The position numbers were made by a program, and so were the translations under genes. A stretch of 64,000 nucleotides of DNA from Mytilus edulis (lineage: Eukaryota): contig NC_092355.1 in the NCBI RefSeq assembly GCF_963676685.1, positions 31,186,001-31,250,000 of the forward strand, given 5' to 3'. The notes beneath the pieces were generated by a model, which searched no databases, was not told where the DNA came from, and worked only from the letters and a program-made list of their open reading frames with translations. This document shows positions 9,772 through 64,000 of this stretch, piece after piece; positions within the stretch are counted from its first letter, which is position 1, and each line of letters opens with the position of its first letter.

Positions 9772-10110
9772 ATGGATATAATTATTGAAAGAACGAGCAA
9801 CCAAGGTGTAGCAGAAAATAGAAATGTTCATGGAATGAGGAAAGTAACATATTGGGAAAATATGGAGTTAAACGTTTTCCATACCGTGGGAGAAAAAGGT
9901 TCACTCCAATTCTCAATCAACATTTTGACGGTCAAATTAGTATAACAAACGATGTATTTGGCCTCACTATTCAGCAATTTGAACGGACCTTTAGAGCCAG
10001 TTTGGAAAGAAGAAAACACAATTCTCAATGGATACTTAATTTAAGATATCCTTTGAAATCTTCCAACAAATACCTTGAATATTTGGAAAATTTTACAGGT
10101 CATATTGAAG
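9772..10110 (+). pseudogene. cGLR copy 1, first coding exon (N-terminal domain); 1-nt deletion in an A-run
   Basis: ATG at 9772; MDIIIERTSNQ...HGMRKVTYWE/KYGVKRFPYRG...YLEYLENFTGHIE. TGGGAAAA has A4 versus A5 in the three paralogs. Phase-1 donor G|GTAAAT at 10111. Confidence 0.85.
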
Positions 10111-11289
10111 GTAAATTGATATAAGTTATTGAAAGTAAACAATCCTACAAATATCCTACAGTAACGTAAAGGAATGATATTATAAAAAAAAACCACACTC
10201 ATTGAATATGCTTGTACTGCTTTCACACCAATTGCAACATTCATCATGTGCAGCATCAACCACAGAATATTATGATAAACACGAATCTGTAATACAGTAC
10301 GGATCCGTCTGAGGATAGACTCGATGAATCGACATATATACATGTTTAGCTCAACCGGCACAAATAGATCAAATGAGCTTTTCTCATCAATCGGCGTCCG
10401 TTGTCGTCCGTTAACTTTTACAAAAATCTTCTCTGAAACTATTAGGTCAAATTCAAACAAACTTGGTCATAATCATTATTGGGGTCTCTAGCATTCGTTG
10501 ATTGTACGTTATGGAATATCTAGACTAGTTCACAGATAACGATGAAACGTTTACAATTTAACGTCGTACCGACAATCCCGTCATAGTTTCCTCAAACATC
10601 ACACCACTTAATGGGGCTGATAACTTATTTGTAGGGACATAAGCATCACACAAAGAATGCCATATGTTGATCAGGATCCGCAATCTGCTCAGACTTCAGG
10701 TATACCTGAGATCACCCCGGTTTTAAATTGGGGTTCGTCTTACTCGGTCTTAGTTTTGATGATGAAACTTATCTTTTTTGTCGTGTTTCGTTTTTAGCAA
10801 TTGCATGACCAGTTTACCTTCGATAGTTTGCATATTTCTTTACTATATTGTCTCTTATTTTCTTCAGCTATACGCTAAAGGTATCTTGGGTATAGCTATA
10901 TAGTTACTGCTGAGCGTCTTTTAGTCAGCAGTAAAACGCTTAGCAAAGTGGATATGCATATCCATTTGACAGTGCGGGATGATTTTGCATCCACTTGTGA
11001 TCAGAATGGGGATGTCAAATCCGTTGTCTTCTGTTAAGAGAGTGCTACGTAAAAAAAAACCATGAATCAACTCTTCGGTTGGGGGGGGGGGGGTTCCATA
11101 GGGGGCCTGTTGCAATGCAACATGTCTGCGTGTATCAAACAAACCCTAGTTGTACAGTTGTAGTTTGAAAGTCCCGCACGTCAACTGTCTCAAAAATGAT
11201 GTAACTATTTATCTTTGAAACATAGTAGTTTACCATTATATTTCAAAATCCATTAAAAAAATATCCATGTATTCATTTTTATCTTTTAG

Positions 11290-13275
11290 GTAATGTGCTC
11301 TGGCCCGGAATAAATGTTAATAATGAATACCTGTATGAACAGCTTGTTCAAATAGTCGGAAAAGAAAGAGACATACGTCATAGACAACGGTTATTTCTGA
11401 TTAAAGATATAATAGAAAATATTATGGACATTTCTAATATACAGCGTATTACAAGTGGAAGTATATCCGAAGGACTTGATTTACCCGGCAGTGACCTTGA
11501 TATGATGTTTGTAATTGGTGTTGTAAAAGTAGTAAATATGTCAGAAAATATGAAATGTTCACGAAAATATACAAAACTGATGATGGAAACAGACCCCTTT
11601 TTTTGTATCCAGGGTTCACAAGACTGAAGTTAGCTGCAGTCGACTATCATTCTTCTTATCGTTTGATCAAAGATTCTCTAGTACAACGTTTGCAAACCAT
11701 CAGAAATGGTTTTTATGTATCAACCTATAAATTCGTTCAAAATATTCAACAAATAACGGAGTCAGTTGAAACGTTATTACACGGTCCATGTTTATCGGAT
11801 TTGTATGAGAAAATGGACGTTGCTTATTGTCTCCGTTGTAAATCATTCCAATACAATGCAAGCAATTGGGTAAATCGTCATAGAAAACATTGGCCACCTA
11901 GTGAAGTAATTGACACAATTGTGAAGAACGGCTGTTTGTTGGTACCTGTTGGACCTAAAACAATGACAAACGATCAATTGTTTTGGAGGTTATCTTTTTC
12001 TGTGGCAGAAAAACAACTGGTTCATTCGTTTAATTATACGCAATTATTATGTTACGGCCTTCTTAAATTAACATTGAAACACATCATTAACAAAAAACCT
12101 GGTGTAAAGGATTTGTTATGCTCCTACTTTCTAAAAACAACGCTCTTCTGGTTATCAGAGAAAGTGTCTATCGAGACATTTCAGTTAGCTAACATATTTA
12201 ACTGCTTTTTCTTGTGATTAGATACATTAAGATCGTTTGTTAACAATTGCTACTGTCCTAACTACTTTATACCTGAACAAAATATGTTTCAAGGAAAGGT
12301 CAATATGAGAAATAATAAGAGATTGCTAAGTATCCTTCACAGTATTGAACGTGGCGGAACAGCTGGACTGATATCTAATTTATTTTGCCTAGCACCAACT
12401 TTTATATGCAAATCTTCCACGCAGTTAGATTTTTTCTTTTATAAATATATCGCCGTATTAAAGTCTCAAACGCTTATAAATGACTGTTACCGAGGAATGA
12501 TTATTGCTAAATCTTTCCTTCAGAGTGAATCATCTATCTTTGTACGGGATGTATGCAAATGGTGGATCGACAGTCTCAATCATTTTGTGGTGCAACTACT
12601 TCCTCGTCCATTTGTGGGACAGAATGTCAAAAATAAACGGAATCGTTATCATAAACATTTACTGCAAAGTTTACAAACAGATGCTGTGAATGGTTGGTTG
12701 TTATACGCTTCGTTTTATTACGTAATTGGACAGTACAAAGTTACACTCCGAATTACAGATTATGTTTTATCAAAGTGTACACATGATAAGTTATATATAG
12801 GCTTTTTAACTTTTCCCCAAGATATAATAAATAACTATGCGAAAAATTTTGTACAAAAAACGTAACACTTAATGAAAAGGCGAAATTAGCGACTATAAAT
12901 CATTTTACATACTTGAAACGTTCATCTTTAATACCTTCGGAGCTAAGCCTGGAGGTGGAAAATAATGAATTGTATGTACCTCCTGTTGTTTTAACTCATT
13001 GTCTTAGAGTTTTGTGTTTCCATCATCTCGGTGAAACCTTCAATACACTACAAGCATGGCAGGATTTGAACTTAACTGTTAGAGAAATGTATTTCATCAC
13101 AAGCTGTCTAAAATCTGAAACATTAACAATTCTCGGTGTGTGCTGTGAGGTATCTGGGGATATTGATTCAGCTTGTTTGTGCTACGATGCAGTTTTACAA
13201 ACCCATAAAGGGACTAATTGTACAGCAGGCATTAGGAAAAAAGAACTCTTGAACAGACGGAATGTTAAACTCTAG
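11290..13275 (+). pseudogene. cGLR copy 1, main exon: Mab-21/cGAS-like nucleotidyltransferase plus TPR-like C-terminus (disrupted as assembled)
   Basis: Acceptor TTTTAG at 11289 is in phase with exon 1. Motifs [51 protein letters not shown] and CPNYFIPEQNMF. Frameshifts near 11600 and 12860; TGA at 12215-12217. Confidence 0.9.
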
Positions 13276-16200
13276 GAATAGTCGTTTTGTTAATGGATGT
13301 TTGCTTTAATGCACATTTTGAATGTATTTGTTTGTCAGGTCATTACAAATACTCTATTGTAATCATTGGTGTAATAAGAAAAATCACATACAAAAATCAC
13401 TAGATTAATTGTTGTTTAAATGCAGAGTTATAGTAGATATAATTAAGAAATTAGTGAGAAAACGAATAAGGTTCAACAGATCATCACTGGACAACGGGAA
13501 AATGTTTCCATGCATGGGAGGAACTAAATCTTTAATGTATAATAATATTTCAGAAAGTTAAAAATTTTAGTATTGTGTGTTCCCATATAAGATGCCAAAA
13601 AACAAACTAAGTTCGGAAAAGATTTGAGATATTCTTCTCTGTAATAATTGAATTGAATAAGTGAACTAACTTATAATATTGATTGTCATGGGCAAAAAAG
13701 AAACAAGAGATATTTGAACATAGTGGGTGATTTAAACTATCCAAAATGAGAGCGGAACGTATCAAATACAAATCAAGTGATTATTTCTTTTCACAGCTGA
13801 CGTGTATGTAACCAATTGAAGGTTACGTACAACCATTAGCAATAAGCATTACTCATCTTATTTTGACGGCTCTAAATGGCCAGAGGATGACAAAATAAAG
13901 GACAATAAAAAAGAGAATATCTACGATCTGATGTATGATAAGACATTAAATAAAAGATATGATAGACATTAAGCGAAAACAACTGAAACGCAAGAACCTA
14001 ACTTGGAACAGGCAATACAATTGCAAATTTGGAGGGGTTAAAAATATTTTCGAGCGCTTTGACATTTTGAGATATTATGTCTGTTTGTTTAGTTCACACA
14101 TCGTTGTCAATATAATGGAATTTGGTGCATGCAAATGGAGGGTTTAGCTAGCTCAAACAACTAGGTTTAATATAACATTGTCTACATAAGAACATGCCGG
14201 TACAAGTCAGGAATATGACAGTTGTCATCAATTCGTTTGGTGTGGTTTTGAGCTTTTAATTGTGTGATTTGATTAGGGTCTTTTTTTTGGAATTTTCCTC
14301 GAAGTTCAGTTTTTTTTGTATTTTATTTAAACAAGAATCAGTGGGTGTAAAAGCACAACATTTAAACAATCTGCAAACATCATTAGCAAAGTGCTTTACT
14401 CATTACATCTGACACTACGCACAATACTAAAAATAAGACAGAAGAAACAACAAACGAGTACTCCTAGTCACTGAAAGCTATTTAAAAGACAATTATAGCT
14501 CACGAACAGATCATGTTTTCCCACACTCAAATTGAAACCAATACAAATTCAACTTCTTAAGATGGCATCATTTGTTCATACATGTAAAATCAGTAACCCC
14601 TTCCCTTTTACACCGGTACAGCCTACAGGTAAAGCCAATTTTAAGATATTTTGGGGGCATTTAGACTTGTGCCATCGCAATTTTCTGACGTACAGATGTG
14701 GTAAAGGACTCAAATTAATCCTCAGATAACCAGCAATGGGATGTAATGTGCATCAAACTTCTATCATTATCAGTTTATAGTCAAGTACACTAACGTGTAC
14801 TCATGTGTACTTTTTATGTACAAACCATTTATTTTTCTTCGAATTTATAGAATATTTTCAAAAAGAAGTGCAAAGAAAACTGCTCTTTCTAGGAGAATTA
14901 TGATTTTTTTCAATTACTGTGCAGTGAGTTTTTGAAGAATAGTATTTAACTAATGGTTCTAACTTGTACACTAGTAAAAATTGTATTTTTCGCGGATTAT
15001 TCAATGTGAAGAGTCAAAATTAAAATTTATGGTTCAATAAATTCAAAATAAACAATAGCCATTCATAAATTATAGGTTCAAAAATATGATTTCATCTTAT
15101 TTAACTGTATTACAATACATTTTTATGAATCGAATCAGTCACTCAAATAGTTTCTCCTTGTTTGACATGCTTCACATGCAATGTTGACATTATTTCCCTT
15201 TCAATAGATGAACACGTATAGTTCGTGCTTACCCATTATCTCTAGATAAGGGGTTATGGTTAAATTATTGACTTGCAAGTGAGATAATACATCAGCGATG
15301 TTTCACCAATTTTACAAAAAATACAAACTGTCTGATTTAAGCGACTAACTTGTTTACTGATTATACTTTATTTTATTACTTATACTTATTACTTTCAGTA
15401 ATGATTGAAAAGATAAAAGTTAAAAAAAATTTCAAACATATTATCATTATATCTCGTAGCTTATGTACTTTTAAAACCCGGTGTTTTCATACCTAAGGAT
15501 ATTTTGTATAACATGTATAATACAAATAGGTGCCCAGCAACCAGCATTAATCAAGTTATATTTCATAATGTGAATTAAATAGCGGTTTCAAATACTGTAT
15601 ATCCATCTTGTAACTTGCTGCATTCCTGAAATGCTGTATATCCGCCGATTTAATGACAAAATGGGGAGGTTAAATTTTCACTGTGTACAATATTCGCTGA
15701 ATTGGAAAATACAAATGACAAAATCACTGCGAAAACCATACTTATGCTTTCATCCGTTAAAATGTGATTTAGGTTAAAAAAAAATATTGCAACATATTTT
15801 ATATCTTTAAACAACAATAATAAGACATCGTTGATAATCATTATTAACATGTCACTGGCTCCTACATGTGCTATGTTGTCAAACGATATGATATATATGA
15901 TTACCCAATTAAAATATTATAAAAACATATATCTAAATCAATTTTGCACACACTTGTGATCTGACGATAAACACACACAAGACTCATTTTATATGTAATT
16001 TAGCACGTTTCACCTTTAGTTAGAAATGAGTTTACATATGACTTTTGTTTAACTCGGTTACCGTAATTAATAATTCTATGTATAAAACATTTAAATATCT
16101 ATACATCTTATAACATGAAGAAAATTTACGTAGGGTCAAAAATTTGTGTTTTGTTTGGTTCCGAACAAAGCGAAATCAAAAACCCGATATTCGGTATCAG

Positions 16201-28027: not shown

Positions 28028-29725
28028 CAAAGAGTCGTTATTAATGGTCAGACATCATCGAGTCAAAACACCTATGCTGGTGTACACCCGGGCTCTATAC
28101 TCGGTCCTCTGCTTTTTCTTATCTATGTTAAAGATATTAAAGTTGGAATTATCATCAATATCAAACTGTTCGCTGATGTAACTTCCCTTGTCAAACAAAT
28201 TGATGACATCTCTGATTGTTTTCAAACTCTGAACAGTGACCGCGACACATTGAACACATGGGCCAATCAATGGTGTGTAACTTTCAATGCACAAAAAACT
28301 GTGTATCTTATTATTTCTAAGAAGAAGCAAATACCCCATTACCCCCCATTGATCTTAAATAATGTGATTATAAAGAGAGTTAAACATTTAGGTTTTATTT
28401 TGAATGATAAACTTTCTTGGACCGATCATATTGCTGACATTTGTAAGAAATGTCATAGTAAACTGAACACTATCTTAAGGATGCGACATATATTATTTAG
28501 AGTATGCATTGAAGAATTATATAAACCATTTCTTCGTTCATTGCTAGACCATGCAGATGTCATCTACTATAACTGCTCTAGCGCCGATTTTGCAAACATT
28601 TAACATGTACAAAGACGTGCCTGCATTATATCTACTTGGGCAATCAGGGTCACAAAACATGTCATTTTATTGAGAGAGGTTAGCCTTGAGCGCCTTTAAA
28701 CACGTCATCAAGTTCTTAGACTTACATACCTGTACAAAATTAAAATCATCTTGTCCAAGATTATCTCTGTTATATCCATCCATTGTTCCATCATAACACC
28801 GAAAACTATAACTTATGACGACATGCCAACGTGATACCCATCAGGTCAAGAACAGTAGCATAATATAATTATTGCATGTCTTCTAGCTACTATTAAAGAC
28901 TGATTTTCAGCAACATCTTTGGCGAGTTTCAAAAAGTTGTTAAAGAAAAAGAATCTCAATGTATGAAGTAAAAAAAAATATATTCACAAGGACATGGTTA
29001 TGAGAAAAAGATTCATACTAGATTACGCTTAGGGCTTAATGCCCTTATTGACCTCTTGTACAAATATAATCTTACATTAAATAGGTTTTTCGATTTCTGC
29101 CCAGGTAACCGTATTGAAAGCACTAAGCACTATTAATTTATTGCGCCCGTTTCATGAACTATCGGATTACTCTTCTACTTGGTATTAAGAATCTGATTTG
29201 TCCGGATATAAATAAAGCAATGTTGCGGGATCTATGTCCCAACTATCTGAGCAAAATTTTGATAGAAGGTAGTGACCATTTGTCTGATGATACTAATTTA
29301 GAGTTGTTTGAGTGTGTGTTTCGATATATTAAATCTTCAAACAGATTTTCTCGATAGCTAAATAACTTATTTGTACTTTATTTTTTCCTTGTAATTAAAC
29401 ATATAAGGTATGAAAAACACTTTCCATTGGATCTGATTGTACTCAAAATCGTCTTTCGGTAATCAGTATGCTATATTTCTGAATCATACATGTTTGTAAA
29501 GTTGTGTGCATGTGAGTAAGAATGAGCGAGTGATTGGATGGGTGTGTAGTCAAATTACATTCTTATGTCTTGTCCTGTAAATATTGTCTTGTCTTGTGTT
29601 TAACATGTTTGTAAACTTTAAAAAAAAACTAACTTTGTTAATTTTGAATCTATATATATCTATGTTGAGGAGACACACCCGTAGCCTCTGGTTGTTTGCA
29701 TCCTCTTTAAATAATTTAATAAAAA
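28028..29725 (+). mobile_element. 5'-truncated, degraded CR1-clade-like LINE (RT C-terminal part and 3' UTR)
   Basis: QRVVING...AGVHPGSILGPLLFLIYVKD...IKLFADVTSL...WANQWCVTFNAQKT...KHLGFILNDKLSWTDHI...HTRLRLGL...FRYIKSSNRF, with many stops and frameshifts. Confidence 0.85.
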
Positions 29726-30949: not shown

Positions 30950-31292
30950 ATGAATAAGTATACCAATAAATCAAGTAATCAAAGTGAATATGACAATGAG
31001 CTTGTGTATGGAATGAGAAAAATAACGTATTGGGAAAAATATGGCGTTAAACGCTTTCTGTACCGCGGATGACGACAATAATGCACACCTTTTCTCGAGT
31101 AACATTTTGATGGTCGAATAGGTATCTCAAAAGACGTATTTGGTCTCACTATTCACCAGTTTGAAAAGAAATTCAAAGCCTGTTTAAAAAGAATGAAACA
31201 TAATTCACAGTGGATTTTGAATTTTGGATTTCCTGTTAAATGTTCGATCGAGTACCTTGAATATTTAGAGAATTGTGAAGATCGTGATGAAG
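30950..31292 (+). pseudogene. cGLR copy 2, first coding exon (three in-frame stops)
   Basis: MNKYTNKSSNQSEYDNELVYGMRKITYWEKYGVKRFLYRG*RQ*CTPFLE*HFDG...YLEYLENCEDRDE; donor G|GTAACC at 31293. Confidence 0.85.
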
Positions 31293-33876: not shown

Positions 33877-34676
33877 ACTCAGACGTACTTATGAATATAA
33901 TTATTTTCTGTGACTGTATCTTACATTAATTTGTAGGATCCTTTACTATAGATAATTTAGCTGATCTGTAACAATAACATCTTCATGCCTTATATATCAT
34001 GTACTGTAGTACGCCGCTAGATTAAAACTGACGTGGAAAGGTAACACATGCCCACCGAAAGCTCTTTTTTGAGAGCCCAGGTGGTCGTGTGGTCTAGCGG
34101 GACGGCTGCAGTGCAGGCGATTTGGTGTCACGATATCACAGTAGCATGGGTTCGAATCCCGGCGAGGGAAGAACCAAAAATTTGCGAAAGCAAATTTACA
34201 GATCTAACATTGTTGGGTTGATGTTTAGACGAGTTGTATATACATTATGTACACAGCCATGTATCACCATCATTGATGGCGATCCGATGGATACGTCTGT
34301 TGTAGGGTTGTCACTGACTCAGACGTACTTATGAATATAATTATTTTCTGTGACTGTATCTTACATTAATTTGTAGGATCCTTTACTATAGATAATTTAG
34401 CTGATCTGTAACAATAACATCTTCATGCCTTATATATCATGTACTGTAGTACGCCGCTAGATTAAAACTGACGTGGAAAGGTAACATATGCCCACCGAAA
34501 GCTCTTTTTTGAGAGCCCAGGTGGTCGTGTGGTCTAGCGGGACGGCTGCAGTGCAGGCGATTTGGTGTCACGATATCACAGTAGCATGGGTTCGAATCCC
34601 GGCGAGGGAAGAACCAAAAATTTGCGAAAGCAAATTTACAGATCTAACATTGTTGGGTTGATGTTTAGACGAGTTG
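33877..34676 (+). repeat. Tandem array (1.8 units, 440-bp period) of a Pol III-type structured-RNA retroelement in a (TA)n tract
   Basis: Near-identical direct repeats at offset 440; A box 34082-34092, B box 34149-34159, T6 runs at 34065-34070 and 34505-34510; (TA)n on both flanks. Confidence 0.85.
34071..34510 (+). ncRNA. Predicted 440-nt Pol III transcript with base-paired 5' and 3' ends
   Basis: G start 11 nt before the A box. The only T-run of 5 or more in the unit is at its end. The 5' ~45 nt are complementary to the 3' ~70 nt, and there are several internal hairpins. Confidence 0.5.
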
Positions 34677-35588
34677 TATATATGATATATATATATACAA
34701 GTATATATATATATATTTATCATTCAGGTCATACATATTGGTCTGAAGATAATGTTCACCAGCAATATGTATATGAACAACTTGTAAATATAATCGGAAA
34801 GGAAACAGATTTACAGCGGTTATTTTTGGTACAAGATGTGATTAATTGGGTCAGGATTAACATACATATCAAGTGGAAGTTTAGCTGAAGGTTTGAGTTT
34901 ACCTGGCAGTGATCTTGATATCATGTACGTTTTACACGGTATTAAAGTCGTCAATAGGGAACAGGATATACCAATTCCAAATGAATTTGCAACACTGTTG
35001 ATGGAGATAAACCCTAATCATCTAGGATTTAGCAGACTTAAATTAGCTGAAGGTTTCGAGACATCTAGTCCACTTCTTTAAAAAATGGTTACAAAAACCG
35101 ACGAAGGTTTATACCTAGAACCCCATGAATTCATTTCAATTTTTCAACAACATACAATACCTACATGGCCCATGTGTTTCAGATAAATGTATGGCTTTGA
35201 ATATAGCAGTTGTTTCCGAAATAAATCACTTCCCTTACTATGTAAAACAATGGGTTTGTCGACAAAGAAAACAATGGCCGCCGAATGCAGTTATTGATAC
35301 CATATATATAATGAGATTTGGATGTTTGCTGGTACCAATCGGACCTAAAACGATGACAAATAATCAGTTTCTATGGAAATTATCATTTTCAGTTGCAGAA
35401 AAACAACTTTTACACCCAACTATTATGCTACGGTCTACTTAAATTAACATTGAAACACATCATAATCAAAAAGCCAGGTGAAGAGGATTTGTTATGTTCA
35501 TATTTTCTAAAAACAACGTTGTTTTGGTTGTCAGAGGAAGCATCCATCTAGACATTTCAATTACAAAACTATTTCACTTTTAAAAATT

Positions 35589-36982
35589 GGCCGTTTCAGA
35601 ATCTAATGCATTCTGGGTAATATTTTCAAAAGCGTACACCAAGGCGTTGTGATTGGTTTAAAACATTCTAAACAATGGAAATTCAACCGATGACGTAACG
35701 TTATTTTCGTTTTAGGGTACGAACAATAAAATTACCCATGATCAGGGTTTCCGCTGGCGGTCGCAATTTGCGAAAAAACAATAATTGTGGCGATAAAAAT
35801 TCGTCATTTGCGAAAGAATTTGGCGAAAGAAATATATATATCCATAACGATTTATTTTCCTCCATCTTGTTTATTTACCTTTTTCGAGTTTCTCGGACTT
35901 TACCCAATCAGTCAATACTCGGAATTCACCTTGACCTTATTAAGATTTGGACAGAAAATCAATAATCAGCTGATTGCATTTTATAGCTATCGACAACAAA
36001 GGACTAATTAATAAAGGTGTTGATTGAATTGTTTGACAAAATGATATGGTTAAATGGCTTCCACTAAATGTCACATGCCGAATTTATTTACCACTTTTCG
36101 ACGCACGTGTTTGAAGCAAACTTTGACGTCTCCTCTCCTTTTAAAGATAGTTTAAAAAGAAAGCTGTTGTTGTGACGAAAAATGTTCAAAAGCAAGAAAA
36201 ATCTCCGATTCAAAACTTTAATTATCCTTTGACTTTAATATAGGTAATTGATTAGGGAGACTACTTTAAAGTCGTTTGAGTGACACACGTGTTTTAAGCA
36301 AAGTTTTACGTCTTAACGTTTTCATTTACGATGGACAAGAAAAGAAAACTGTCGTTATGAAGAAATCTATCCAAAAGGTTGGGAACAACCATCAAATGAG
36401 AGTAACCCTTCAATGTAATGTCTACACATGAAATGAGGGGTCAATTTCATGTGATAAAAGCTTTTGTTTTGTTGTAAAAACCACTTCTTAGTACAAAAGG
36501 GCACATCAGTATTTTTCTTTTAAAGAAACTTTCCCTACGAACTATACTCATGTCTGGTAAATAAATATTATATGATCAAAATATGCCCATTAATTTTGTT
36601 ATATTCCAGGACTTCTTTATTATTAAAAGTATAGTGGTCTCCTCATTTAGAAAAGTTGTTTAAAATACAAGAATATTTTTCCCTTTTAAGTTAAAAAATT
36701 CTGTTGTTTTAAAGTAAACGGTTAGTGTTTATTCATTAAAATGTAGACTCTAAAATAAGTTTGAGAGAATAATCAAAGACACAATGGGGAAAAATCATCT
36801 TAATTAAGGGAGGGGTAGAAAAAAAGGTAAATTTCAAACGAAAAATATATTTATGTTACATGTACTTGGCGAAAAAAATAATAAAGTGGCGAAAAATATA
36901 TTGTTTTGGCGAAAGAGGTGGCGAAAAAAATAATTGACCCAGGGGAAACCCTGCCCATGATGCTTCAAGTACTGAAACGGCC
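35589..36982. mobile_element. Short TIR element with a 4-bp AATT duplication (Sola1-like, superfamily uncertain), containing a nested hAT
   Basis: TIR GGCCGTTTCAG...CTGAAACGGCC. Removing it plus one AATT restores the codon register seen in copies 1 and 3. Confidence 0.75.
35743..36953. mobile_element. Non-autonomous hAT element
   Basis: TIR CAGGGTTTCCGCTGG / CCAGGGGAAACCCTG; perfect 8-bp TSD CCCATGAT (35735-35742 and 36954-36961); subterminal TGGCGAAA repeats. Confidence 0.9.
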
Positions 36983-38149
36983 AATTGTGCCTAGGTAATT
37001 TAATATCGTAGATAGAAAACTGCCACTGTCCTAATTACTTTATACCTGCACAAAACATGTTTCAGGCAAAAGTAGAGCAATAACCAACTCTTGCTCAGTT
37101 TTCTCGACAGCATTATTTGTGATGAAACTGTAGGACTGGTATCGAATGTATTTTCTAAAGACCTAGCATCGACCATGACAAACAAGTAGACTTTTTGTTT
37201 TATAAGATTTTTTCCAAATTTGGAAACCGTGGATTAATCGCCGTTCAATATCTGCTCCAATCAGAATCATCTGTATATATACGTGATGTTTGCAGAAGAT
37301 GGATATCAAATATTAACCAGTATATACTGTACTACAATAACTTCCTTCTCGGGTCAGAAGAAAGAAGATCGAAAATATACGTAACCGCTATCATAATCAT
37401 TCACAAGATGCCCTACAGCAAGATGTTGTGACTGGGTGGCTGTTGTATGCATCTTTTTACTATGTTATCGGACAGCATAATGTTACACTCCGAATAGTAC
37501 ATCATGTTCTAACAAAGTGTACATCGGATAAGATATGTCACGGCCTGGTATCATATCTCCAAAGACAGACTAATTACTTGCTAAATATGTCCATATGCAA
37601 TCCATAGCATGAAATGGAAAGTTAAGATTAGCAACTATTTCTCCTATTAGATACTTACAGAATTCGTCTTCAATACCCAATGAGTTACAACTTTAGATCC
37701 AAAAAGGCTACATCACCGTAACTCCTGTTGTGATGCCTCATTGTATGAAATTTTTATGTTTTTATCATCTTGGTGATTTTTTTAACAGACAACGGGCGCT
37801 GAGAGATTTGTATTTGACTCTAGAGGATGTTTTTTTTTTATTTCACCAAAACAACAATCATTGTCTTTCTTAATTGGTGGTATGTGCTCAGAATTATCTG
37901 CTGATATAGAAACTGCCTGTCAGTGTTACGTTGCGATAAAAAATATTGTTTCACAGCAAAAATCAGGAAAACAAGAATCTCTTAAAAAGACAGGATTTGG
38001 AATTTTCTTAATAACCGAGAAAAATATACCAGTTTCATTACTTGAAATAAACGTTATATGATGTGTGTCCTTTGAAAACTGGTTATTTCAATCATTACTG
38101 TCATATGTTTAATTGCTTCAGATGAACCTTAAAAGAAATAGCAAGTTCA

Positions 38150-44840: not shown

Positions 44841-45168
44841 ATGTACACCGATACCTCTAGAACAAGCAGACAAAATGGACATATACATGGAATTAGGAAC
44901 ATAACATTTTGGGAAAAATACGGGGTAAAACGCTTTCCATACCGTGGAACACGACGGCACACACCAATTCCTCAACAACATTTTGATGGTCAAATAAGTA
45001 TCTCTAACGACGTACTTGGCCTTACTATTCAGCAGTTTGAAGAGAATTTCAAAGCATGCTTAGAAAGAAGAAAACAAAATTCTGAATGGATCATGAATTT
45101 GAGATATCCAGTTAAATCTTCTAATGAATACCTGGAATACTTAAAGAATTGTAAAAGTCATGATGAAG
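44841..45168 (+). CDS. cGLR copy 3, first coding exon (intact N-terminal domain)
   Basis: Open frame MYTDTSRTSRQ...YLEYLKNCKSHDE; acceptor TTTCAG 10 nt before the ATG; phase-1 donor G|GTAATC at 45169. Confidence 0.8.
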
Positions 45169-46889
45169 GTAATCTAGAAATATAACACAATATGTATGGA
45201 TTAAGTTTATAGGTCAGTTCACAAGAGGCATTTTGGTAAACAAAAGATTTATCAGTAAAAAGATAAGCAATTGGAAATCGAAAATGAGATACGTTGAAAA
45301 ATATAGATTATCTTTAAACCAGAAAACGAGTTCTTCGTAGTTGAAAGGATAAAGTTATATAGGTTTCAATTCTATACACATAGACATTGCAATTTCCAAT
45401 AGGAACTCCAATTAAGGCTTAAATTGTACAATTTTTACTATGAAGTTTCGTAACATAATATATTCAAGAACAGAAAGCTCATATGCATTACTTTATTTAA
45501 AGGTAAAAATATAGGGCTATGTGGCATATTTTCAACATTCATATGTTGCTAACATCTAATAGTTAAAACTTATATAAAACAATTGTACTATCTTTTCCTT
45601 CAATTTGAGTCTTCAAAATATTACAATTTGGCATTATGCATGTGTATAGATATTGTAACATTTCCTAGTTATGTCTCTACGAGATGTCACATAGATATCA
45701 TATGTTGTATACAAAACAAAATATCTATGAATAATTTATATCTCCCCAAAAGAGGTCCTGGTTTGTGAACAGCAGTTTTACAGGGTGCAACCAGTAAGGA
45801 TCAAATTTGGCCCCAATTATCAAGTGTTATGTATCAAGATAAAAGTATTCAAAATTAATGAAAAGACATGTTGATTTTTACAAATAGGTCCCCAAAAACA
45901 ATATTTTGGAAAAATTTTCATGATTTAAACCGAATAGAGGCATAAGAAGCAAAGGGCACATGCATCGGTAATCTAATATCTTAGACCGATAAGTAAAATG
46001 TGCAAGCCAAAGTAACTCAATATAGATTATTGTTAAGCACATAATAAAGCTTCATGAACTAATTCAATGCATATCAGTATAAATACGCACGTCTTAATGT
46101 GTGACAACCTTACGGCATGCATTCTCAATCGGATATCCTATGCGTACAGTCCTAACACCTCAATTTTATAAACTTCGAATGAAATCTAGCCATAAATGTC
46201 AGTCGTATTCCAAACGTACTTGTTTAACATCGAAGCGAACGCACTATTTGCGGCTCCCTCGGCGAAAAACTTTTTTTTTCAAATAGTATAGATAAACAAG
46301 AAAACTTTCATTAGTCGAGTGTACCATTTCTTGTATTTAAACCAATAATTTACAAAGTTACAAAGTCCTCCCAATTCTCTGAAATCATTAATACTTTTTG
46401 GGGAAAAAATAAAACTAGTTTATAAATTCAAAAATGACCACTTGATAATAAGGCGAAATCATGAGTCTAAACTTGGATAAGGACAACTATCATTCATAAC
46501 TTTATTTATCTAAAAATCAGGAGATATGGTATGAGTACTAATGAGACATCGACCCACAAGAGATCAAATAAAGTGCGTATAATCATGTAAGACGTGCGTA
46601 TTCAAATAGAAATGCGTTTTAACCTGATTTTAAAAGACACTTTATAGCAACCCAGTGGTATTTTTTATTAAAGAAAATTTATTTCAATAGGTTTACGGGT
46701 ATGTAATTTAAATCTGAAAACTAGGAGTCGAATCCCATGAAGGTAGCATTCAAGGATCAACTGAAACACTACATAATGAATATATCAAAATATATGACAG
46801 AACAGAAAAGAAATCCAGAAAATTTCGAAACATTCAAGAATGATGTTTCGTTTTTCACTAAGCAGTGTTATTTCGTACATTTTACGGCC

Positions 46890-48478: not shown

Positions 48479-49673
48479 TTCAATGTTTACTTTTGGCACA
48501 ATATGGTCTAAAATATCAACATTGTTATAAAAAAAACACCAAAAACCATTTGGTTCGTAATTGGGTCTATTACTCTTTCTGTGATATCCATTTTACGAGC
48601 TCGGTACTTATACATCCCGTCCATGTGTTTGTATTATCTTTCATTTTTGCTGGTGTGATTTGTATGTTCGATAGTGTGTGTTTCTTTGGTTCAAATGACG
48701 TGACTCTGTGCTTTAAAAGATCCCGTCATTATGTTATATTGTTCTATAATATGTCATTATGGTATTGTTCTATTATAAATTTGACAATACTTTAAACGAC
48801 TAACGAGAAAATTATTTTACTCACGTAGTGGTATAAACCATATGTGGATTCTTAAAAATTCTAAAGAACTTCTGGATAATTTCAAATCTTGGTCTTTTTC
48901 TGAAAATATTTCTAACATAACTTTTGACTTTTTAACCCTGTATACCACTATTCCTTATGTGTAATTTTAATTCTTTGAAAATACTATGAACGACAAAAGT
49001 TCTTCCTATGTGACGATTACATTTTCTTACGTCAAACAAGCAAAGTAATGAATGTGATTTCTAAATTTGATAGATGCTTTTTGTGAATTTTTGTTAAATA
49101 TTTGTTTGTTTTGAGATTGTGACACAGTCATGACTGCTGTACCCATATTTTGAGTATTTTGCCTGTTATGTCTGTTTTGTTCACACATCATTGTAGATAC
49201 AGCTGAATTTGATGTGACTGTCATATAAGTGAGAAGTTAAGCGCTAATAACCAGGTTTTATCCACAATTTTCTATATTTGAAAAAACCTGTCACAAGTCA
49301 AGAATATGACAGTTGTTGTCCTTTCAGTTTATCATTTGGTTTTTACATTTGATTAGGGACTTTCCTAATGTTAAGTAAATCAGTTCTTTAACAAAAACTG
49401 CATTATATTCGCCAAAGTTAACCAATTTTGTAAATTGAAATATGATGATTATGTGCACCTTGGACGCCACCTACGATCAAAATATGAAAATGCTCCGTCA
49501 TTTTACAAGATATTTGAATTATATATTTGTAAAACGGAAGAGTCATAACTTTAACAATATCAAAAATCATAGTCTTATCATGTACAGTTCTATCTTACCT
49601 TGATTCTGGTCAGTGGTGTGTCCTCTCCAAATCTTTAGTAATGATTTGCATATATTTCTTGTTTATGTTTCAG

Positions 49674-51644
49674 GTTAAATATTTTGGCCTGATGATTCTC
49701 ATGAAAAATATGTGTACGAACAGCTTGTAAATATAGTCGGTAAGGAAACAGAGATACATCAAAGACAACGTTTATTTCTGGTACAAGATGAAATATATAA
49801 TACTTTGCATCCTACAACTGGGTATACATATCTATCAAGTGGAAGTCTAGCTGAAGGTTTGTGTTGACCAGGCAGTGATCTCGATATAATGAACGTTATA
49901 CATGGTATTAAAGTCGTCACTAGCATGAAGGGTGTAAAAATCCCATATGAATTTGCTACACTTATGATGGAGATAGACCATGCACATCCAGGATTTAGTC
50001 GACTGAAATTGGCCGGCGGGTTCGAGACATCCATTCCAGTACTTCACGATATTGTTACCGAAACCGACAAAGGTTTATATCTAACACCAGAAAAGTTCAT
50101 TGGACGTTTTAAACGGGAACATACAAGTACTAATTTTGTGGATTTACATGGTCCATGTATTTCGGATCGCAATTTATCTTATGATATTACAATTTGTTTT
50201 CGCTGTAAATCGCTCCCATACATTGCGATACCGTGGGTTTATCGGCATAGGAAAGAATGGCCACCAAATGTAATAATAGATGCAATAGTGAGAAATGGGT
50301 GTTTATTGGTACCAATCGGACCAAAACACATGACAAATAATCAATTTTTATGGAGAATGTCATTTTCAGTTGCAGAAAAACAACTTTTGCACGCGTTTAA
50401 CTATACCCAATTATTATGCTACGGTCTACTGAAATTAACATTAAAACACATCATAAACAAACAAAGAAGGATTTACTCTGTTCCTACTTTCTTAAAACGA
50501 CGCTTTTTTGGATATCAGAAGAAGTTTGCATACAGACCTTTCAGTTAGGTAACCTATTTTACTGTTTTTCACTGTGTTTGATTAAATTAAGACCATGGAT
50601 AGAAAACTGTTTCTGTCCGAACTATTTTATACCTGAACAAAATATAAAGGAAAAGTCAATACTTCTAATAATCAGCAATTGCTTAGTGTTCTTGATAATA
50701 TTATTTGTGACGGAACTTCTGGACAAATATCTAATGTACTTTCCAAAGGTCTTGCATCAACTATGAAAAGCAGTTCCACAATTCAGCAAGACTTTTTGTT
50801 TTATAAGATTTTCGCTCAGTTCGGAAATCCCAAGAAAATAAGTCACTGTTACCGGGGGTTGGTTACTGTTACATCTCTGCTGGAATCAGAATCGTCTGAA
50901 TATGTTCTTTATGTTTGCAAACGTTGGAAATCCAAAATCAATCAGTATATGCTACAACTACTACCTTGTCCGGTCAAAGGACATAATATCGAAAATATAC
51001 GACGTCGTTATCACAAACATTTACAAGAAGCGATAAAACAAGATGATGTAACTGGATTGATGATGTTTGCATCGTTTTACTATGTCATTGGCCAGCACAA
51101 TGTAACAATCCAAATAACTGATTATGTCCTATCAAAGTGTACACCTGATCAGGTTTGTCAAGGATTATCATTCTATGTACAAAGACATGTGAATTATTAT
51201 GCTAAACATGTTCATACACAATCTATCAATTTAAATGACAAGTTGAAATTAGCGACCATTTCTGTGGTTACATATTTACAACATTCTTCCATAATACCAG
51301 AAGAGCTAAAACTTGAGATCCAACACTGCATGATCACCGTTACTCCTGTTGTTATGTGTCATTGTCTAAAATTTTTATGCTATTATCATATTCGTGATAT
51401 GTCCAATCGACAACAGGCATTGAGGGATTTGTGTTTGACCATTAAGAAAAAGTACTTTGTTCCACAATAACAACTTTCATTAGCATTACAAGTTTGGAGT
51501 GTTTGCGCTGAATTGTCTGGCGATAAAGATACTGCTTATGATTGTTACGATAAAGCGTCATTGTGTGAAGAGGATGTGTGTATAACAGCAAATATCCGAA
51601 AAACAAATCTATTAAACAAAAAGGCTGTGATATTCTCTGGATAA
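49674..51644 (+). pseudogene. cGLR copy 3, main exon (Mab-21 NTase plus TPR-like tail), disrupted
   Basis: Acceptor TTTCAG at 49673. TAA at 49676-49678; SGSLAEGLC*PGSDLDIM (TGA 49865-49867); frameshifting deletions near 50465 and 50645; TAA at 51468-51470; paralogous tail runs to TAA at 51644. Confidence 0.9.
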
Positions 51645-58719: not shown

Positions 58720-59059
58720 ATGAATACTAAAAGCAATAGAGCAAGCAACCAGAGTGAAGATGACAATGAACATGTGTATGGAATGAGAAAAATAACGTAT
58801 TGGGAAAAATACGATGTTAAACGATTTCCCTACCGTGGAAAACGACGGCACTCTCCCCTTCTTCAACAACGTTTTGACGGTGGAATAAATATTTCTAATG
58901 ACGTATTTGGTCTCACTATTCACCAATTCGAACAGAAATATATAGCTTGCTTGGAAAGAAGGAAACACAATTCACAGCGGATTCTCAATTTGCGATATCC
59001 TGTTAAATCTTCAAACAAATACCTGGAATATTTAGAACATTGTGTTGAACTTGATGATG
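58720..59059 (+). CDS. cGLR copy 4, first coding exon (113 codons, intact)
   Basis: Open frame MNTKSNRASNQ...YLEYLEHCVELDD; consensus phase-1 donor G|GTAAGT at 59060. Confidence 0.9.
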
Positions 59060-61623: not shown

Positions 61624-61640
61624 ACATTGATCTTTATATA

Positions 61641-62492
61641 TGTAGGACTCTAAAGTGCGATGGGGACGCTAAAGTACGATGGTCACGCTCAAGTGCGATG
61701 GTCTACGCTAAAGTGCAATTCCTCCATACGCTATAGTACGATGTTCTGCGAAAGTATAGACGTAAGAAACGTACATGGATTATGACGTTAACAGTCGTTT
61801 ATACAAACTAAAAATGAACACGCCGGAAGACAACTAACAAATATTTGATTCATAAGAACTTCAAGTTTTTATCCAAATGTCTAGTTTGTACATTGCAGGA
61901 AAATATAACATGGATGTATAGTCGCTACAAAAAACAGAGAACATTAAGCTCGGCAAACATCGCTTTTTCCCGTTCATTTAAATTAAACAAATAAATGTAC
62001 ACATTCCGACAATAATCGAATTTTGTATCTGTAATGTAAAAAAGACGATTGTCAGAGGATGTGTTCCTATTAGTGTAACGGCAATCTACACCAATTATCC
62101 AAATATTCAATACGCATTATTTTAAATAAAATATAATATTTTGCGACACATAAATTACCTTTTTAGCAATTGTTACGTACTTTGGTCAGTCTTTTTAATT
62201 TAGAAACAATCACTTTAGCCTATCGGTAAATTATGAAGCCTATCACATATGTTATACCTTAGCATACTAGCTTTTGCTAAAAAAAAAAAAACTGTTTAAA
62301 CCTCGATATTTTGATCCCTCTAATCTTAACTTGTTGTTCCATCGCACTTTAGCGTGATATACCATCGTACTTTAGCGAACAAACAACCATCGCACTTAAA
62401 TAGCGTGAGACACCATCGTATTTTAGCGTAGACCATCGCACTTTAGCGTGACCATCGCACTTTAGAGTATCATCGCACTTTAGAGTCCTACA
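61641..62492. mobile_element. Non-autonomous TIR element with TGT...ACA ends (Ginger-like) in a TA tract
   Basis: TIR TGTAGGACTCTAAAGTGCGATG / CATCGCACTTTAGAGTCCTACA; multiple subterminal CGCTAAAGTGCGATG repeats; TATA flanks. Confidence 0.8.
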
Positions 62493-62499
62493 TATATAT

Positions 62500-63068
62500 A
62501 GTGCAGGCGATTCGGTGTCACGATATCACAGTAGCATGGGTTCGAATCCCGGCGAGGGAAGAACCAAAAATTTGCGAAAGCAAATTTACAGATCTAACAT
62601 TGTTGGGTTGATGTTTAGACGAGTTGTATATACATTATGTACACACCCATGTATCACCATCATTGATGGCGATCCGATGGATACATCTGTTGTATAGTTG
62701 TCACTGACTCAGACGTACTTATAAATATAATTATTTTCTGTGACTGTATATTACATTAATTTGTAGGATCCTTTACTATAGATAATTTAGCTGATCTGTA
62801 ACAATAACATCTTCATGCCTTATATATCATGTACTGTAGTACGCCGCTAGATTAAAACTGACGAGGAAAGGTAACACACGGCCAGCGAAAGCTCTATTTT
62901 TGTAGAGCCCAGGTGGTCGTGTGGTCTAGCGGGACGGCTGCAGTGCAGGCGATTCGGTGTCACGATATCACAGTAGCATGGGTTCGAATCCCGACGAGGG
63001 AAGAACCAAAAATTTGCGAAAGCAAATTTACAGATCTAACATTGTTGGGTTGATGTTTAGACGAGTTG
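62500..63068 (+). repeat. Second tandem array (1.3 units, 442-bp period) of the Pol III-type retroelement
   Basis: Same family as 33877-34676 and the same 3' end GACGAGTTG(TA)n, with a different 5' truncation. Confidence 0.85.
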
Positions 63069-63686
63069 TATATATATATATATAATATATATATACATGT
63101 ATTATAAAGAATAAGAGAATGAATTTGTTGAATGTCACAAGCCCTAAAGCATTGTCGTTTACTTCAATTTCTATTTCATATGTTGTTCCTTCTTTAACAT
63201 TTGAAATATGTGGGGCCTCTTTCTATTCTTTTGATTTCAATTCTTCTCTTTTAAATTCTTTGTTTTCTGGTTATCTCTTTGCCTCTCCAATTTCTTATTC
63301 ATACTTTCCCAAACATTCGGCGTAAATTTTCCTCGGGAACGTTCTGATGCCTCATTTACCTGAAAGTTTTATTTATTTATTTGTAATGAAAAGGTGTAAT
63401 ATATATTACAGTGCAAAATTAATCCAATCATGCATTAAAACATCAATTTAAAAATATTTTATACCTGACTAACAAAGGCACTCATTAAGCGTTTAACATC
63501 ATAATGTGATATATGGCCAGGTTTATTAAGTGATTGCAATAATTAGGTCATCTGGTGATGGGTATGCAATTTTATATTGATTCTGCATATGATGTACATC
63601 CTTTTTAGTGTTTTTTTTTTATATACAATGGCAAAGTTATCTAAATGTGAAAAATGTTCATGCCCATGTTCATTTTTATCTTTCAG

Positions 63687-64000
63687 ATTACATGTCTTGG
63701 CCAGGAAAAGATTTTCATGCAGAATATTTATATAGTCAGCTGGTACACATAGTTGGTAAGGAAACCGACGTACGTTGCAGACAACGGTTATTTCTAATTG
63801 AAGATATAATAAGAAATATTATTCGTCCTTCTTTTATACGTTTTGTAAGCGGACGTTTATCTAAAGGACTGGATTTACCTGGAAGTGATCTGGATATTAT
63901 GTACGTTTTACCATTTGCAGAAGCAATTAGTGATACACAGAATATAAAAGACATCACAACACTGTTAATGGAGATAGATTCCTTTCATCCTGGGTTTACA
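63687..64000 (+). CDS. cGLR copy 4, main exon (partial, open to the window edge): Mab-21/cGAS-like nucleotidyltransferase
   Basis: Acceptor TTTCAG at 63686, in phase with exon 1. DYMSWPGKDFHAEYLYSQLVHIVGKETDVRCRQRLFLIEDI...VSGRLSKGLDLPGSDLDIMYV...MEIDSFHPGFT with no stop. Confidence 0.85.

What the first reader, a model, noticed from the sequence alone, without database searches (positions are those of the whole stretch)
9772..64000. Tandem array of four cGAS-like receptors with a three-part architecture (unknown N-domain + Mab-21 NTase + TPR-like tail), evolving by birth and death
Seen: four co-oriented paralogs share a phase-1 intron linking a ~110-aa exon to an exon with GS-x-DxD, a third Asp, WRLSFS and SYFLKT motifs and a LGVCxExxGDxxxAxxCY TPR-like tail. 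Decay ranges from open (copy 4) to heavily degraded (copy 2). Established: cGLRs are PAMP-activated cyclic dinucleotide synthases upstream of STING and are expanded in bivalves. Inference: this is a distinct subfamily whose ligand, product and accessory domains are probably uncharacterised.
Basis: partly seen in the sequence, partly recalled or inferred. Interest (0 to 1): 0.8.

Follow-up and report, generated by a model that had tools for sequence, protein, structure and literature searches.

The report
Broken mussel cGAS-like receptor gene array
This stretch of a blue-mussel chromosome holds four disabled copies of a very large mussel-specific family of cGAS-like immune enzymes that carry an unknown extra domain at the front and a TPR-like repeat tail at the back.

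Summary
The four co-oriented paralogs are real. The phase-1 GT..AG intron joining a ~113-aa exon to a ~2-kb Mab-21 exon is conserved in 7 of 7 local copies. It appears as a spliced joint in two RNA-like public runs and in public Mytilus gene models.

Intact relatives have three parts:
- a basic N-domain with no Pfam, PDB or Atlas relative;
- a catalytically complete Mab-21/cGLR-type core, whose best PDB hit is "cGAS-like receptor 1";
- a ~330-aa tail ending in a sub-threshold TPR, whose Atlas model resembles TPR proteins.

All four window copies are broken in this assembly, copy 4 included: beyond the window end it has a frameshift, a ~6-kb inverted-repeat insertion and GS changed to GR. Copy 1's four lesions are absent from the public contigs that cover them, so it is probably a null allele of a live, transcribed gene.

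The array has at least 7 copies. The family has over 100 in this genome, mostly on one chromosome. cGLR-TPR fusions are already in print (Li et al. 2023 preprint); only the N-domain, found in named records only in Mytilus, looks new. Ligand and product are untested.

Earlier scan notes on other DNA of this genome describe the same family (s1-838054, s1-838887).

The parts
9762..10110 (+). Copy 1, first coding exon (ATG at 9772). It encodes the N-domain. The assembly has a 1-nt frameshift at the A4 run at 9857-9860.
   Evidence: acceptor cag at 9759-9761; an extra A behind 9856 in contigs of all 4 runs (X1 31.3 of 58 depth)..
10111..11289 (+). Copy 1 phase-1 intron (GT..AG, 1179 nt). It contains a high-copy repeat at about 10287-10568.
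   Evidence: joint 10108->11288 (cut +2 = 10110/11290), skipping 1179, in X15 (1 contig, depth 16.1) and X16 (1 contig, depth 141.6), none in DNA run X1. RNA-like runs have zero depth in bins 10146-10286 and 10569-10991..
11290..13275 (+). Copy 1 large exon: Mab-21 NTase core, Mab-21_C and TPR-like tail. Broken in the assembly by a T7 run near 11598 (frameshift), TGA at 12215-12217 and a 1-nt loss near 12847.
   Evidence: 5 letters left out at 11598 (X17, the only run covering it), A>T at 12217 in 4 of 4 runs, an extra A behind 12847 in 4 of 4 runs (X1 49.3 of 64.9 depth).
30950..31292 (+). Copy 2 N-domain exon, with three in-frame stops (31070, 31079, 31100).
34728..38008 (+). Copy 2 large exon, heavily decayed: at least 5 frame changes, many stops, a 1.38-kb insertion at 35579-36960, and the third catalytic Asp read as Asn.
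   Evidence: Asn read from the ORF translation against P0009.
44841..45168 (+). Copy 3 N-domain exon, open.
49671..51638 (+). Copy 3 large exon: TAA two codons after the acceptor (49676), stops at 49865 and 51468, and frameshifts near 50467-50569 and 50643.
58720..59059 (+). Copy 4 N-domain exon, open.
63687..64000 (+). Start of the copy 4 large exon (GS motif reads GR). It runs off the window. In L009 it has a frameshift near 1834-1864 and a ~6-kb insertion bounded by inverted repeats.
63410..63634 (.). A ~220-nt dispersed repeat just upstream of the copy 4 acceptor. Its peptide signature also occurs near 34562, 62452 and 62930.
   Evidence: 39 further genome matches at 86-90% identity to query positions 4-235..

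Best explanation
The window lies on a Mytilus edulis chromosome, judged by a matching contig length. It holds four tandem, same-strand members of a large Mytilus-specific branch of Mab-21 / cGAS-like nucleotidyltransferase genes. Each gene has two coding exons.

Shown:
- A ~113-aa exon is spliced by a phase-1 GT..AG intron to a single ~2-kb exon.
- Intact relatives are ~770-aa proteins with three parts: a basic N-domain of unrecognised fold; a Mab-21 core plus Mab-21_C helix bundle with the GS, DxD and third-Asp catalytic set; and a ~330-aa helical tail that ends in a TPR-type repeat.
- All four window copies are disabled in this assembly. Copy 1 is transcribed and spliced in other samples, and its lesions are absent there.
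- The cluster has at least 7 copies. They include recent duplicates (92-95% nt identity) and old ones (65-70%).

Inferred:
- Intact members work like cGLRs. They would be held inactive until a ligand is bound, then make a nucleotide second messenger for STING, which the genome encodes.
- The variable TPR tail and the conserved basic N-domain would act as recognition or regulatory modules.
- The array turns over by tandem duplication, transposon insertion and point decay, with null alleles segregating.
For: Gene structure:
- Splice sites and phase are conserved in 7 of 7 copies.
- A spliced joint sits exactly at 10110/11290 in 2 RNA-like runs and not in the DNA run.
- Public models P0009, P0001 and P0003 join the same residues.
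- 80 of 103 N-exon matches have a large exon downstream on the same strand within 20 kb, at a median of 1,774 nt.

Identity of the core:
- Pfam Mab-21 scores 43.9 bits and Mab-21_C 40.9 bits on intact copy 5.
- Catalytic residues are invariant in 18 of 18 genomic paralogs and kept in 50-51 of 51 full-length proteins.
- A profile search of the PDB gives cGLR1 8gjy at 2.5e-21, MB21D2 at 2.1e-14, pig cGAS at 2.5e-14 and MAB21L1 at only 1.3e-3. The third Asp aligns with cGAS's catalytic VD.

Tail:
- 9 of 10 Atlas structural rows are TPR proteins, with TM 0.48-0.56.
- TPR_2 hits 10 of 16 tails and TPR_1 hits 9 of 16.
- PDB TPR proteins match profile positions ~258-319.

Other:
- STING_LBD has 5 matches over its cut-off in the genome.
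- Lesions are listed.
Against: - No enzymatic, ligand or STING data exist for any member.
- The published cGLR motif is not met to the letter: S rather than Q/T before GS, and 101 rather than 50-90 residues before the third Asp.
- HMM alignments to solved cGLRs and cGAS cover only the part from the third Asp onwards.
- Wherever cut-offs were shown, the TPR Pfam scores are below the curated cut-offs. Intact copy 7's tail alone gave 0 families.
- Atlas TM values near 0.5 compare two predicted models.
- The RNA-like runs are labelled RNA only by a guess, and they are contigs.
- Contigs laid at 95% or more may come from sister species or alleles. The intact state of copy 1 is therefore shown for other samples, not for the reference animal.
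- Expression of copies 2-4 was not tested.
Confidence: 0.75

Rival explanations
1. The family has the Mab-21 fold but does not signal through a nucleotide messenger. It would act as a scaffold or adaptor, like MAB21L1 or the MiD49/51 type of Mab-21 proteins, with the TPR tail mediating protein-protein contacts.
For: No activity data exist. The N-lobe is too divergent to align with solved cGLRs by HMM. The NTase core has pI 6.81, not the pI above 8.5 that Li et al. report for nucleic-acid-sensing cGLRs (passage). TPR modules are typical protein-interaction domains.
Against: GS, DxD and the third Asp are invariant in 18 of 18 genomic paralogs, including two from the distant subfamily, and are kept in 50-51 of 51 proteins at about 60% mean identity. 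That is hard to explain without catalysis. MAB21L1 is a far weaker PDB match (1.3e-3) than cGLR1 (2.5e-21).
Confidence: 0.12
2. The frameshifts and stops are assembly errors, and the window holds four intact, working genes.
For: Copy 1's four lesions are absent from the public contigs that cover them. One of them is a homopolymer length difference, A4 against A5.
Against: 72 of 106 scored family members have open frames of 600 aa or more in the same assembly (hand count), so errors are not general. The lesions include a TGT>TGA substitution and a 5-T expansion. Copy 2 has dozens of stops, and copy 4 has a ~6-kb insertion bounded by inverted repeats. In DNA run X1, only 31.3 of 58 depth at 9856 and 49.3 of 64.9 at 12847 carry the extra A. 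The rest reads as the reference, or comes from a paralog.
Confidence: 0.07
3. The ~113-aa exon belongs to a separate small gene, and its proximity to the Mab-21 exon is a coincidence of tandem duplication.
For: Copy 3 would stop two codons after the splice, giving an N-domain-only product. Many short database proteins hold only this domain. Two public models attach it to SRCR and SNF transporter genes.
Against: The spliced joint is seen in 2 runs. Phase is conserved in 7 of 7 copies. 75 of 83 close large exons have the exon upstream. About 770-aa models exist in five species. The short proteins sit on contigs of 0.9-2.5 kb and are probably single-exon calls.
Confidence: 0.03

Closest known systems
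cGLR proteins fused to tetratricopeptide-repeat modules (architecture class in Li et al. 2023, preprint PMC9980059; passages and figure legend read)
   Same: A Mab-21/cGLR core with a complete catalytic set, followed by a TPR-type module, in a bivalve lineage with a very large radiation.
   Different: The paper's passages name no Mytilus protein. The extra N-terminal domain on its own exon is not mentioned in the text I read. No TPR-fused cGLR is described there as characterised.
PDB 8gjy chain A, 'cGAS-like receptor 1' (depositor's name; species not known to me)
   Same: It is the best solved relative by sequence: E 5.1e-11 with a single sequence and 2.5e-21 with a profile. The alignment runs from the third catalytic Asp through the C-terminal helix bundle, ending at C-P-x-Y-F-I.
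   Different: It is a single-domain protein of 376 residues with no N-domain and no tail. The N-lobe did not align by HMM.
Human/mouse cGAS
   Same: Mab-21 fold family, GS/DxD/D catalytic set, the WRLSFS-type motif, and a basic region N-terminal to the core (the last point about cGAS is recalled, not from a call).
   Different: PDB profile E-values are only about 1e-11. The mussel N part is a conserved, apparently folded domain, where (from recall) that of cGAS is disordered. The core pI is 6.8. No zinc-thumb comparison was possible.
MB21D2 (PDB 7lt1)
   Same: It is the second-best solved relative (2.1e-14) and is counted as a cGLR with a complete active site by Li et al. (passage).
   Different: It is a vertebrate single-copy gene with no TPR tail and no radiation.

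Membership tests
cGLR (criteria of Li et al. 2023 preprint) | Catalytic residues present: GS, [DE]h[DE]h and a third acidic residue | tested here: met
   Copy 5 reads SGS-x10-DLDI ... VDF. The residues are invariant in 18 of 18 genomic paralogs. Among full-length proteins: G 51/51, S 51/51, D 50/51, D 51/51, D 50/51. Among the window copies, only copies 1 and 2 keep GS..DxD cleanly.
cGLR (criteria of Li et al. 2023 preprint) | Literal pattern h[QT]GS x8-20 [DE]h[DE]h x50-90 h[DE]h | tested here: not met
   The residue before GS is S, not Q or T. The second spacer is 101 residues in copy 5, not 50-90 (against the pattern quoted).
cGLR (criteria of Li et al. 2023 preprint) | Homology across both the NTase core and the C-terminal helix bundle | tested here: met
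   Pfam Mab-21 and Mab-21_C are both over the 24.1-bit cut-off: 43.9 and 40.9 bits on copy 5, 33.1 and 47.0 bits on copy 7.
cGLR (criteria of Li et al. 2023 preprint) | Predicted structural homology to known cGLR/CD-NTase enzymes | not testable with these tools
The Atlas holds a model of P0009 (pTM 0.81), but I queried only its N part and its tail.
cGLR (functional definition) | Ligand-activated synthesis of a nucleotide second messenger that a STING-type receptor reads | not testable with these tools
   The only test possible here: STING_LBD (PF15009) has 5 matches over its cut-off in the genome.
Pfam Mab-21 / Mab-21_C | Score over the curated gathering cut-off | tested here: met
   (Mab-21_C over the cut-off in 6 of 6 distant-subfamily members).
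TPR repeat proteins | TPR Pfam model over its curated cut-off, or a TPR superhelix fold | tested here: inconclusive
   Sequence: TPR_2 hits 10 of 16 tails and TPR_1 hits 9 of 16 at E down to 5.7e-5. Where cut-offs were shown, scores were below them, for example 21.8 against 30.1. Only the last repeat matches PDB TPRs. Structure: 9 of 10 Atlas rows are TPR proteins at TM 0.48-0.56, comparing predicted models. One relative, P0136, carries a precomputed PF00515 hit.
MAB21L1/2-type developmental Mab-21 proteins | No predicted functional active site (as stated in the Li et al. figure legend) | tested here: not met
   The active-site residues are complete. MAB21L1 is only a weak PDB match at 1.3e-3.

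The most novel reading that the evidence does not exclude
The conserved basic N-domain and the fast-evolving TPR tail together form a recognition module that lets a cGLR core sense something other than long double-stranded nucleic acid, such as a pathogen protein, a capped or modified RNA end, or a small molecule. Mytilus would then keep a repertoire of over 100 such sensors, with segregating null alleles. This would be an animal counterpart of the repeat-based sensor repertoires of plant NLRs and bacterial TPR-STAND defence proteins, wired to nucleotide second-messenger signalling.
Probability: 0.2. Interest if true: 0.8.

Novelty: new variant of a known kind. Interest (0 to 1): 0.45.

Why it matters
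cGLRs are a recently recognised class of animal pattern-recognition receptors, and for most of them the ligand is unknown. If these are working enzymes, the mussel family offers a natural series of over 100 paralogs. In it a catalytically conserved core is flanked by a lineage-specific conserved domain and a variable repeat tail. That is the layout expected if the flanks carry recognition.

The family also shows receptor turnover in progress. One 130-kb cluster holds intact genes, a transcribed gene whose reference allele carries four lesions, and old wrecks. This bears on the heavy presence-absence variation reported for mussel genomes (that report is recalled, not read here).

For genome annotation, the practical point is that the four copies in this window should be treated as pseudogenes or null alleles in this assembly.

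Tried and rejected
I used the ESM Atlas model of P0009, PDB profile searches and per-member Pfam scans instead.
- N-domain searches found nothing outside the family. Pfam gave no family for the three single exon-1 queries, and the per-member scan of 24 gave only four weak families, best E 0.033. The PDB profile search gave nothing better than E 0.86. Atlas features gave no usable hit, and the best structural TM, 0.44, was to its own family.
- ARAGORN found no tRNA in the window, so I could not tie the ~220-nt repeat to a tRNA-derived SINE.
- Five other window ORFs gave no Pfam family.
- I could not build a phylogeny against characterised cGLRs. PDB E-value ranking is a weak substitute.
- I could not settle the taxonomic range of the wider Mab-21+TPR family beyond Mytilus. 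Atlas rows say only 'commonest Mollusca'.
- Searches of the held paper library (open PubMed Central papers and bioRxiv only): 'cGLR'+'Mytilus', 'Mab-21'+'bivalve'+'cGAS', 'cGAS-like receptors'+'mollusc', 'cGLR'+'tetratricopeptide', '8GJY', 'Mab-21'+'Mytilus', 'Mab21'+'Mytilus', 'cGAS'+'STING'+'Mytilus'+'expansion'. No paper in these listings describes this Mytilus family. PMC11817969 and PMC6215123 only list Mab-21 in tables (passages read). Tables S1 and S2 of Li et al. may list these proteins and the TPR class; supplements were closed.
- I rejected the idea of a transposon-borne gene. Homology between copies 1 and 5 covers just the gene unit of about 3.8 kb, and no transposase-like ORF accompanies the copies. 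I did not test this further.


Full report
WHERE THE WINDOW IS. The window is G000:C12:31186001-31250000 of a 1.37-Gb assembly. Contig C12 is 82,303,794 bases long. Several 'Mytilus edulis' proteins sit on a contig of the same length, so I take the genome to be a blue mussel. That is an inference from contig length. The window has about 32% G+C and no N.

THE OBSERVATION.
- A tblastn self-map shows four + strand copies. Each has a short exon homologous to ORF 44841-45185 and, 1.2-4.6 kb downstream, a ~2-kb exon.
- In all four, the short exon ends ...YLEYL-x8-(E/D)-G|GTAA. The same holds for three further copies that I fetched downstream: copy 5 on L012, copy 6 on L013 and copy 7 on L014 (minus strand).
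- In all seven, the long exon is preceded by a pyrimidine run and YAG, followed by two bases that complete the split codon. This is a phase-1 intron in 7 of 7 copies.
- Pfam Mab-21 scores over its cut-off on pieces of copies 1 and 3.
- The motif claim holds only in part. GS..DxD is clean in copies 1 and 2, holds a stop in copy 3, and reads GR in copy 4. WRLSFS is exact only in copy 1. The LGVC...CY tail motif matched only in copy 1. For copy 4, nearly all of the large exon lies beyond base 64000.

IS THE SHORT EXON SPLICED TO THE NTase EXON? Yes.
- I laid contigs of four public runs on 9300-13500 at 95% identity or more.
- Two RNA-like runs each hold one contig that joins 10110 to 11290: X15 at depth 16.1 and X16 at depth 141.6. 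The tool printed 10108/11288 'cut +2', GT..AG, skipping 1179. The DNA run X1 holds none.
- The three RNA-like runs have zero depth in intron bins 10146-10286 and 10569-10991, while X1 covers all 30 bins. Their RNA label is a guess by the tool, and these are contigs, not reads.
- Independently, the public M. edulis protein P0009 (771 aa) is the product of copy 7 with exactly this join (...HDEG|YTYWSE). P0001 and P0003 of M. galloprovincialis join ...HIEG|YVLWPG.
- Genome-wide, 80 of 103 N-exon matches have a large-exon match downstream on the same strand within 20 kb, at a median of 1,774 nt. This is a lower bound, since only 106 of 901 large-exon candidates were scored.
- An acceptor-like cag sits at 9759-9761, ten bases before the ATG at 9772. 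In one search, a 153-letter X17 contig fits the stretch only from 9763 to 9893, over 132 of its letters, which leaves 21 letters unplaced at one end. A non-coding leader exon probably lies upstream. That is inference.

STATE OF THE FOUR COPIES. I compared each with its nearest intact protein.
- Copy 1 has three frameshifts (near 9858, 11534-11603 and 12838-12859) and TGA at 12215.
- Copy 2 has at least five frame changes, stops throughout (three of them in the N-exon) and a 1.38-kb insertion at 35579-36960.
- Copy 3 has an open N-exon, but TAA at 49676 (two codons after the acceptor), stops at 49865 and 51468, and two frameshifts.
- Copy 4 has an open N-exon and an open 424-aa stretch that crosses the window end. 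It then has a frameshift near L009 1834-1864 and a ~6.0-kb insertion at L009 2286-8317. The insertion has inverted arms at about 2312-2969 and 7657-8271, 87-90% complementary, and no ORF of 150 aa or more lying wholly inside it. Its GS motif reads GR.
- The assembly is not generally error-ridden. By my hand count's table, 72 of 106 scored family members have open frames of 600 aa or more.

COPY 1 IS A SPECIAL CASE. Each of its four lesions is replaced by the frame-preserving state in the public contigs that cover it.
- An extra A behind 9856 appears in all four runs (X1 31.3 of 58 depth).
- A>T at 12217, which turns TGA into TGT, appears in all four.
- An extra A behind 12847 appears in all four (X1 49.3 of 64.9 depth).
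- Five letters are left out at 11598 in X17, the only run with cover there.
- In context, the lesions are A4 for A5, T7 for T2, TGA for TGT and a 1-nt loss.
- Copy 1 is closest to intact 780-aa genes of other Mytilus species: P0002 scores best and P0003 second.
- The simplest reading is a null allele, or less likely a set of errors, in the reference haplotype of a gene that is live and transcribed in other animals. The contigs may come from sister species or other individuals, so this says nothing certain about the reference animal.

THE CLUSTER AND THE FAMILY.
- Downstream of the window lie copy 5 (large exon open, 681 aa), copy 6 (one frameshift) and copy 7 (open, 675 aa, opposite strand). 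No family match was found in the 10 kb upstream (L011) or in L010.
- Nucleotide identity groups the copies as {1, 5, 6} at 92-95%, 2 with 7 at 84%, and 3 with 7 at 76%. Copy 4 is 65-70% identical to all others.
- Pairwise dS is 0.04-0.11 for copies 5/6/1, 0.16-0.20 for 7/2 and 0.71-0.80 for 7/3. dN/dS is 0.21-0.30 for the old pair and 0.28-1.05 for the young ones.
- Intact genes, a polymorphic null, transposon hits and old wrecks side by side fit birth-and-death turnover.
- Genome-wide, 72 of 106 scored large exons and 74 of 103 N-exons lie on C12.
- A more distant set of large exons (37-42% identity, open frames mostly 619-742 aa) almost never has the N-exon upstream: 1 of 23, against 75 of 83 for the closer set. 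In the six members I scanned, this set still has Mab-21_C (6 of 6 over the cut-off), and 2 of 6 have a sub-threshold terminal TPR.
- The Mab-21+tail layout therefore looks older, and the N-exon marks a subclade.

THE THREE PARTS.

(1) N-domain.
- It is 113 aa with pI 9.78.
- Over the same 51 full-length proteins it is the most conserved part: 64.5% mean pairwise identity, against 60.5% for the core and 50.6% for the tail.
- It has no Pfam family and no PDB match better than E 0.86.
- The Atlas gave no usable feature hit, and the best structural TM, 0.44, was to its own family.
- The word search found 41 proteins among 85 candidates, all named Mytilus. Two are odd models that attach the domain to SRCR and SNF transporter genes.
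- The profile search of 1.84 billion representatives found only 57 at E up to 0.001. Of the ten I looked up, the two that had names were Mytilus. The rest sit on unnamed contigs of 0.9-2.5 kb.

(2) Core.
- Mab-21 and Mab-21_C both score over the cut-off.
- S-G-S, D-x-D and the third D are invariant in 18 of 18 genomic paralogs.
- The PDB ranking is cGLR1 (8gjy) 2.5e-21, MB21D2 2.1e-14, pig cGAS 2.5e-14, cGLR1 (8gjw) 5.8e-12, human and mouse cGAS about 1e-11, and MAB21L1 1.3e-3. The third Asp aligns with the VD of cGAS.
- Li et al.'s literal motif is missed twice: S before GS, and a spacer of 101.

(3) Tail.
- It is about 330 aa with pI 9.22.
- Single tail pieces from the window gave no TPR hit. 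Among 16 tails, however, 10 hit TPR_2 and 9 hit TPR_1.
- The tail profile hits designed consensus TPRs (4.5e-7), SPINDLY (2.7e-6) and IFIT1 (0.023), always through its last ~60 positions.
- The Atlas model of P0009 residues 440-771 has TPR proteins in 9 of 10 rows at TM 0.48-0.56.
- 'TPR-like' is fair. A canonical multi-repeat TPR is not shown.

HOW IT PROBABLY WORKS.
- Shown: the gene structure, the domain layout, the conserved catalytic set, transcription and splicing of copy 1's locus, and STING-domain loci in the genome (5 matches over the cut-off).
- Inferred from what is established for cGLRs (Li et al. preprint, abstract and passages read): intact members are ligand-gated nucleotidyltransferases that make a nucleotide second messenger.
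- The core is near neutral while both flanks are basic. The tail is the most variable part, and the N-domain the most conserved.
- My guess, at about even odds, is that the tail carries recognition or partner binding, and the N-domain has a shared role such as nucleic-acid or membrane contact or autoinhibition.
- The four window copies themselves probably make no full-length protein from this haplotype.

WHAT IS KNOWN.
- Li et al. state that 87% of cGLRs are single-domain, that some carry tetratricopeptide and ankyrin modules, and that some bivalves have more than 200 cGLRs (passages only; Tables S1 and S2 not seen).
- The family is annotated as 'uncharacterized protein' or 'Mab-21-like HhH/H2TH-like domain-containing protein' in five Mytilus species.
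- Eight searches of the held paper library found no paper describing this family.
- Earlier notes of this scan on other DNA of the same genome report the same kind of gene. s1-838054 describes a 'hidden, shared N-terminal exon', and s1-838887 refers to an 'NTase/TPR boundary'.

VERDICT. This is a real, well-observed array, but an ordinary member of a known kind: radiated bivalve cGLRs, including the TPR-fused class. Two features are worth keeping. One is a Mytilus-restricted, strongly conserved N-domain of unknown fold on its own exon. The other is a cluster caught in turnover, with one transcribed gene represented by a null allele in the reference.

Noticed in passing
window 63410-63634; similar peptide signature near 34562, 62452, 62930: A ~220-nt dispersed repeat with at least 39 other genome copies at 86-90% identity. 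It sits just upstream of the large-exon acceptor in copies 2 and 4. ARAGORN finds no tRNA in the window.
   Followed up: partly
window 10287-10568 (intron of copy 1): A very high-copy element. Summed contig depth is about 34,000 in the DNA run X1 and far above the flanks in all four runs. Many contigs have loose ends at 10391-10441.
   Followed up: no
L009 2286-8317 (= C12:31251286-31257317, just past the window end): A ~6-kb insertion in the copy 4 large exon. It is bounded by ~660-nt inverted arms built of short tandem repeats and has no ORF of 150 aa or more lying wholly inside it. It looks like a non-autonomous foldback or TIR element.
   Followed up: partly
L013 6990-7319 (C12:31302990-31303319): An extra, open copy of the last ~110 aa of the tail lies about 400 nt downstream of the copy 6 stop codon. 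It is a partial duplicate of the TPR end.
   Followed up: no
proteins P0127 (M. trossulus) and P0139: Public gene models attach the N-domain to a six-SRCR scavenger-receptor protein and to an SNF-family transporter. These are either annotation read-through or real exon shuffling of the N-exon.
   Followed up: partly
G000 C12:52.6-53.6 Mb, C8:84.2-84.8 Mb, C13:1.4-4.6 Mb: Clusters of a more distant Mab-21+tail subfamily (37-42% identity, open frames mostly 619-742 aa). Only 1 of 23 has the N-exon upstream. The six members I scanned all keep GS..DxD.
   Followed up: partly
window 9759-9772: An acceptor-like cag lies ten bases before the copy 1 ATG, and the RNA-like contigs laid there fit the stretch only from about 9763 rightwards. 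This suggests an unannotated non-coding leader exon upstream of the laid stretch.
   Followed up: partly
window 28250-28603: An ORF whose translation looks like the C-terminal part of a reverse transcriptase, by eye. Pfam gave no family at E up to 0.01.
   Followed up: partly
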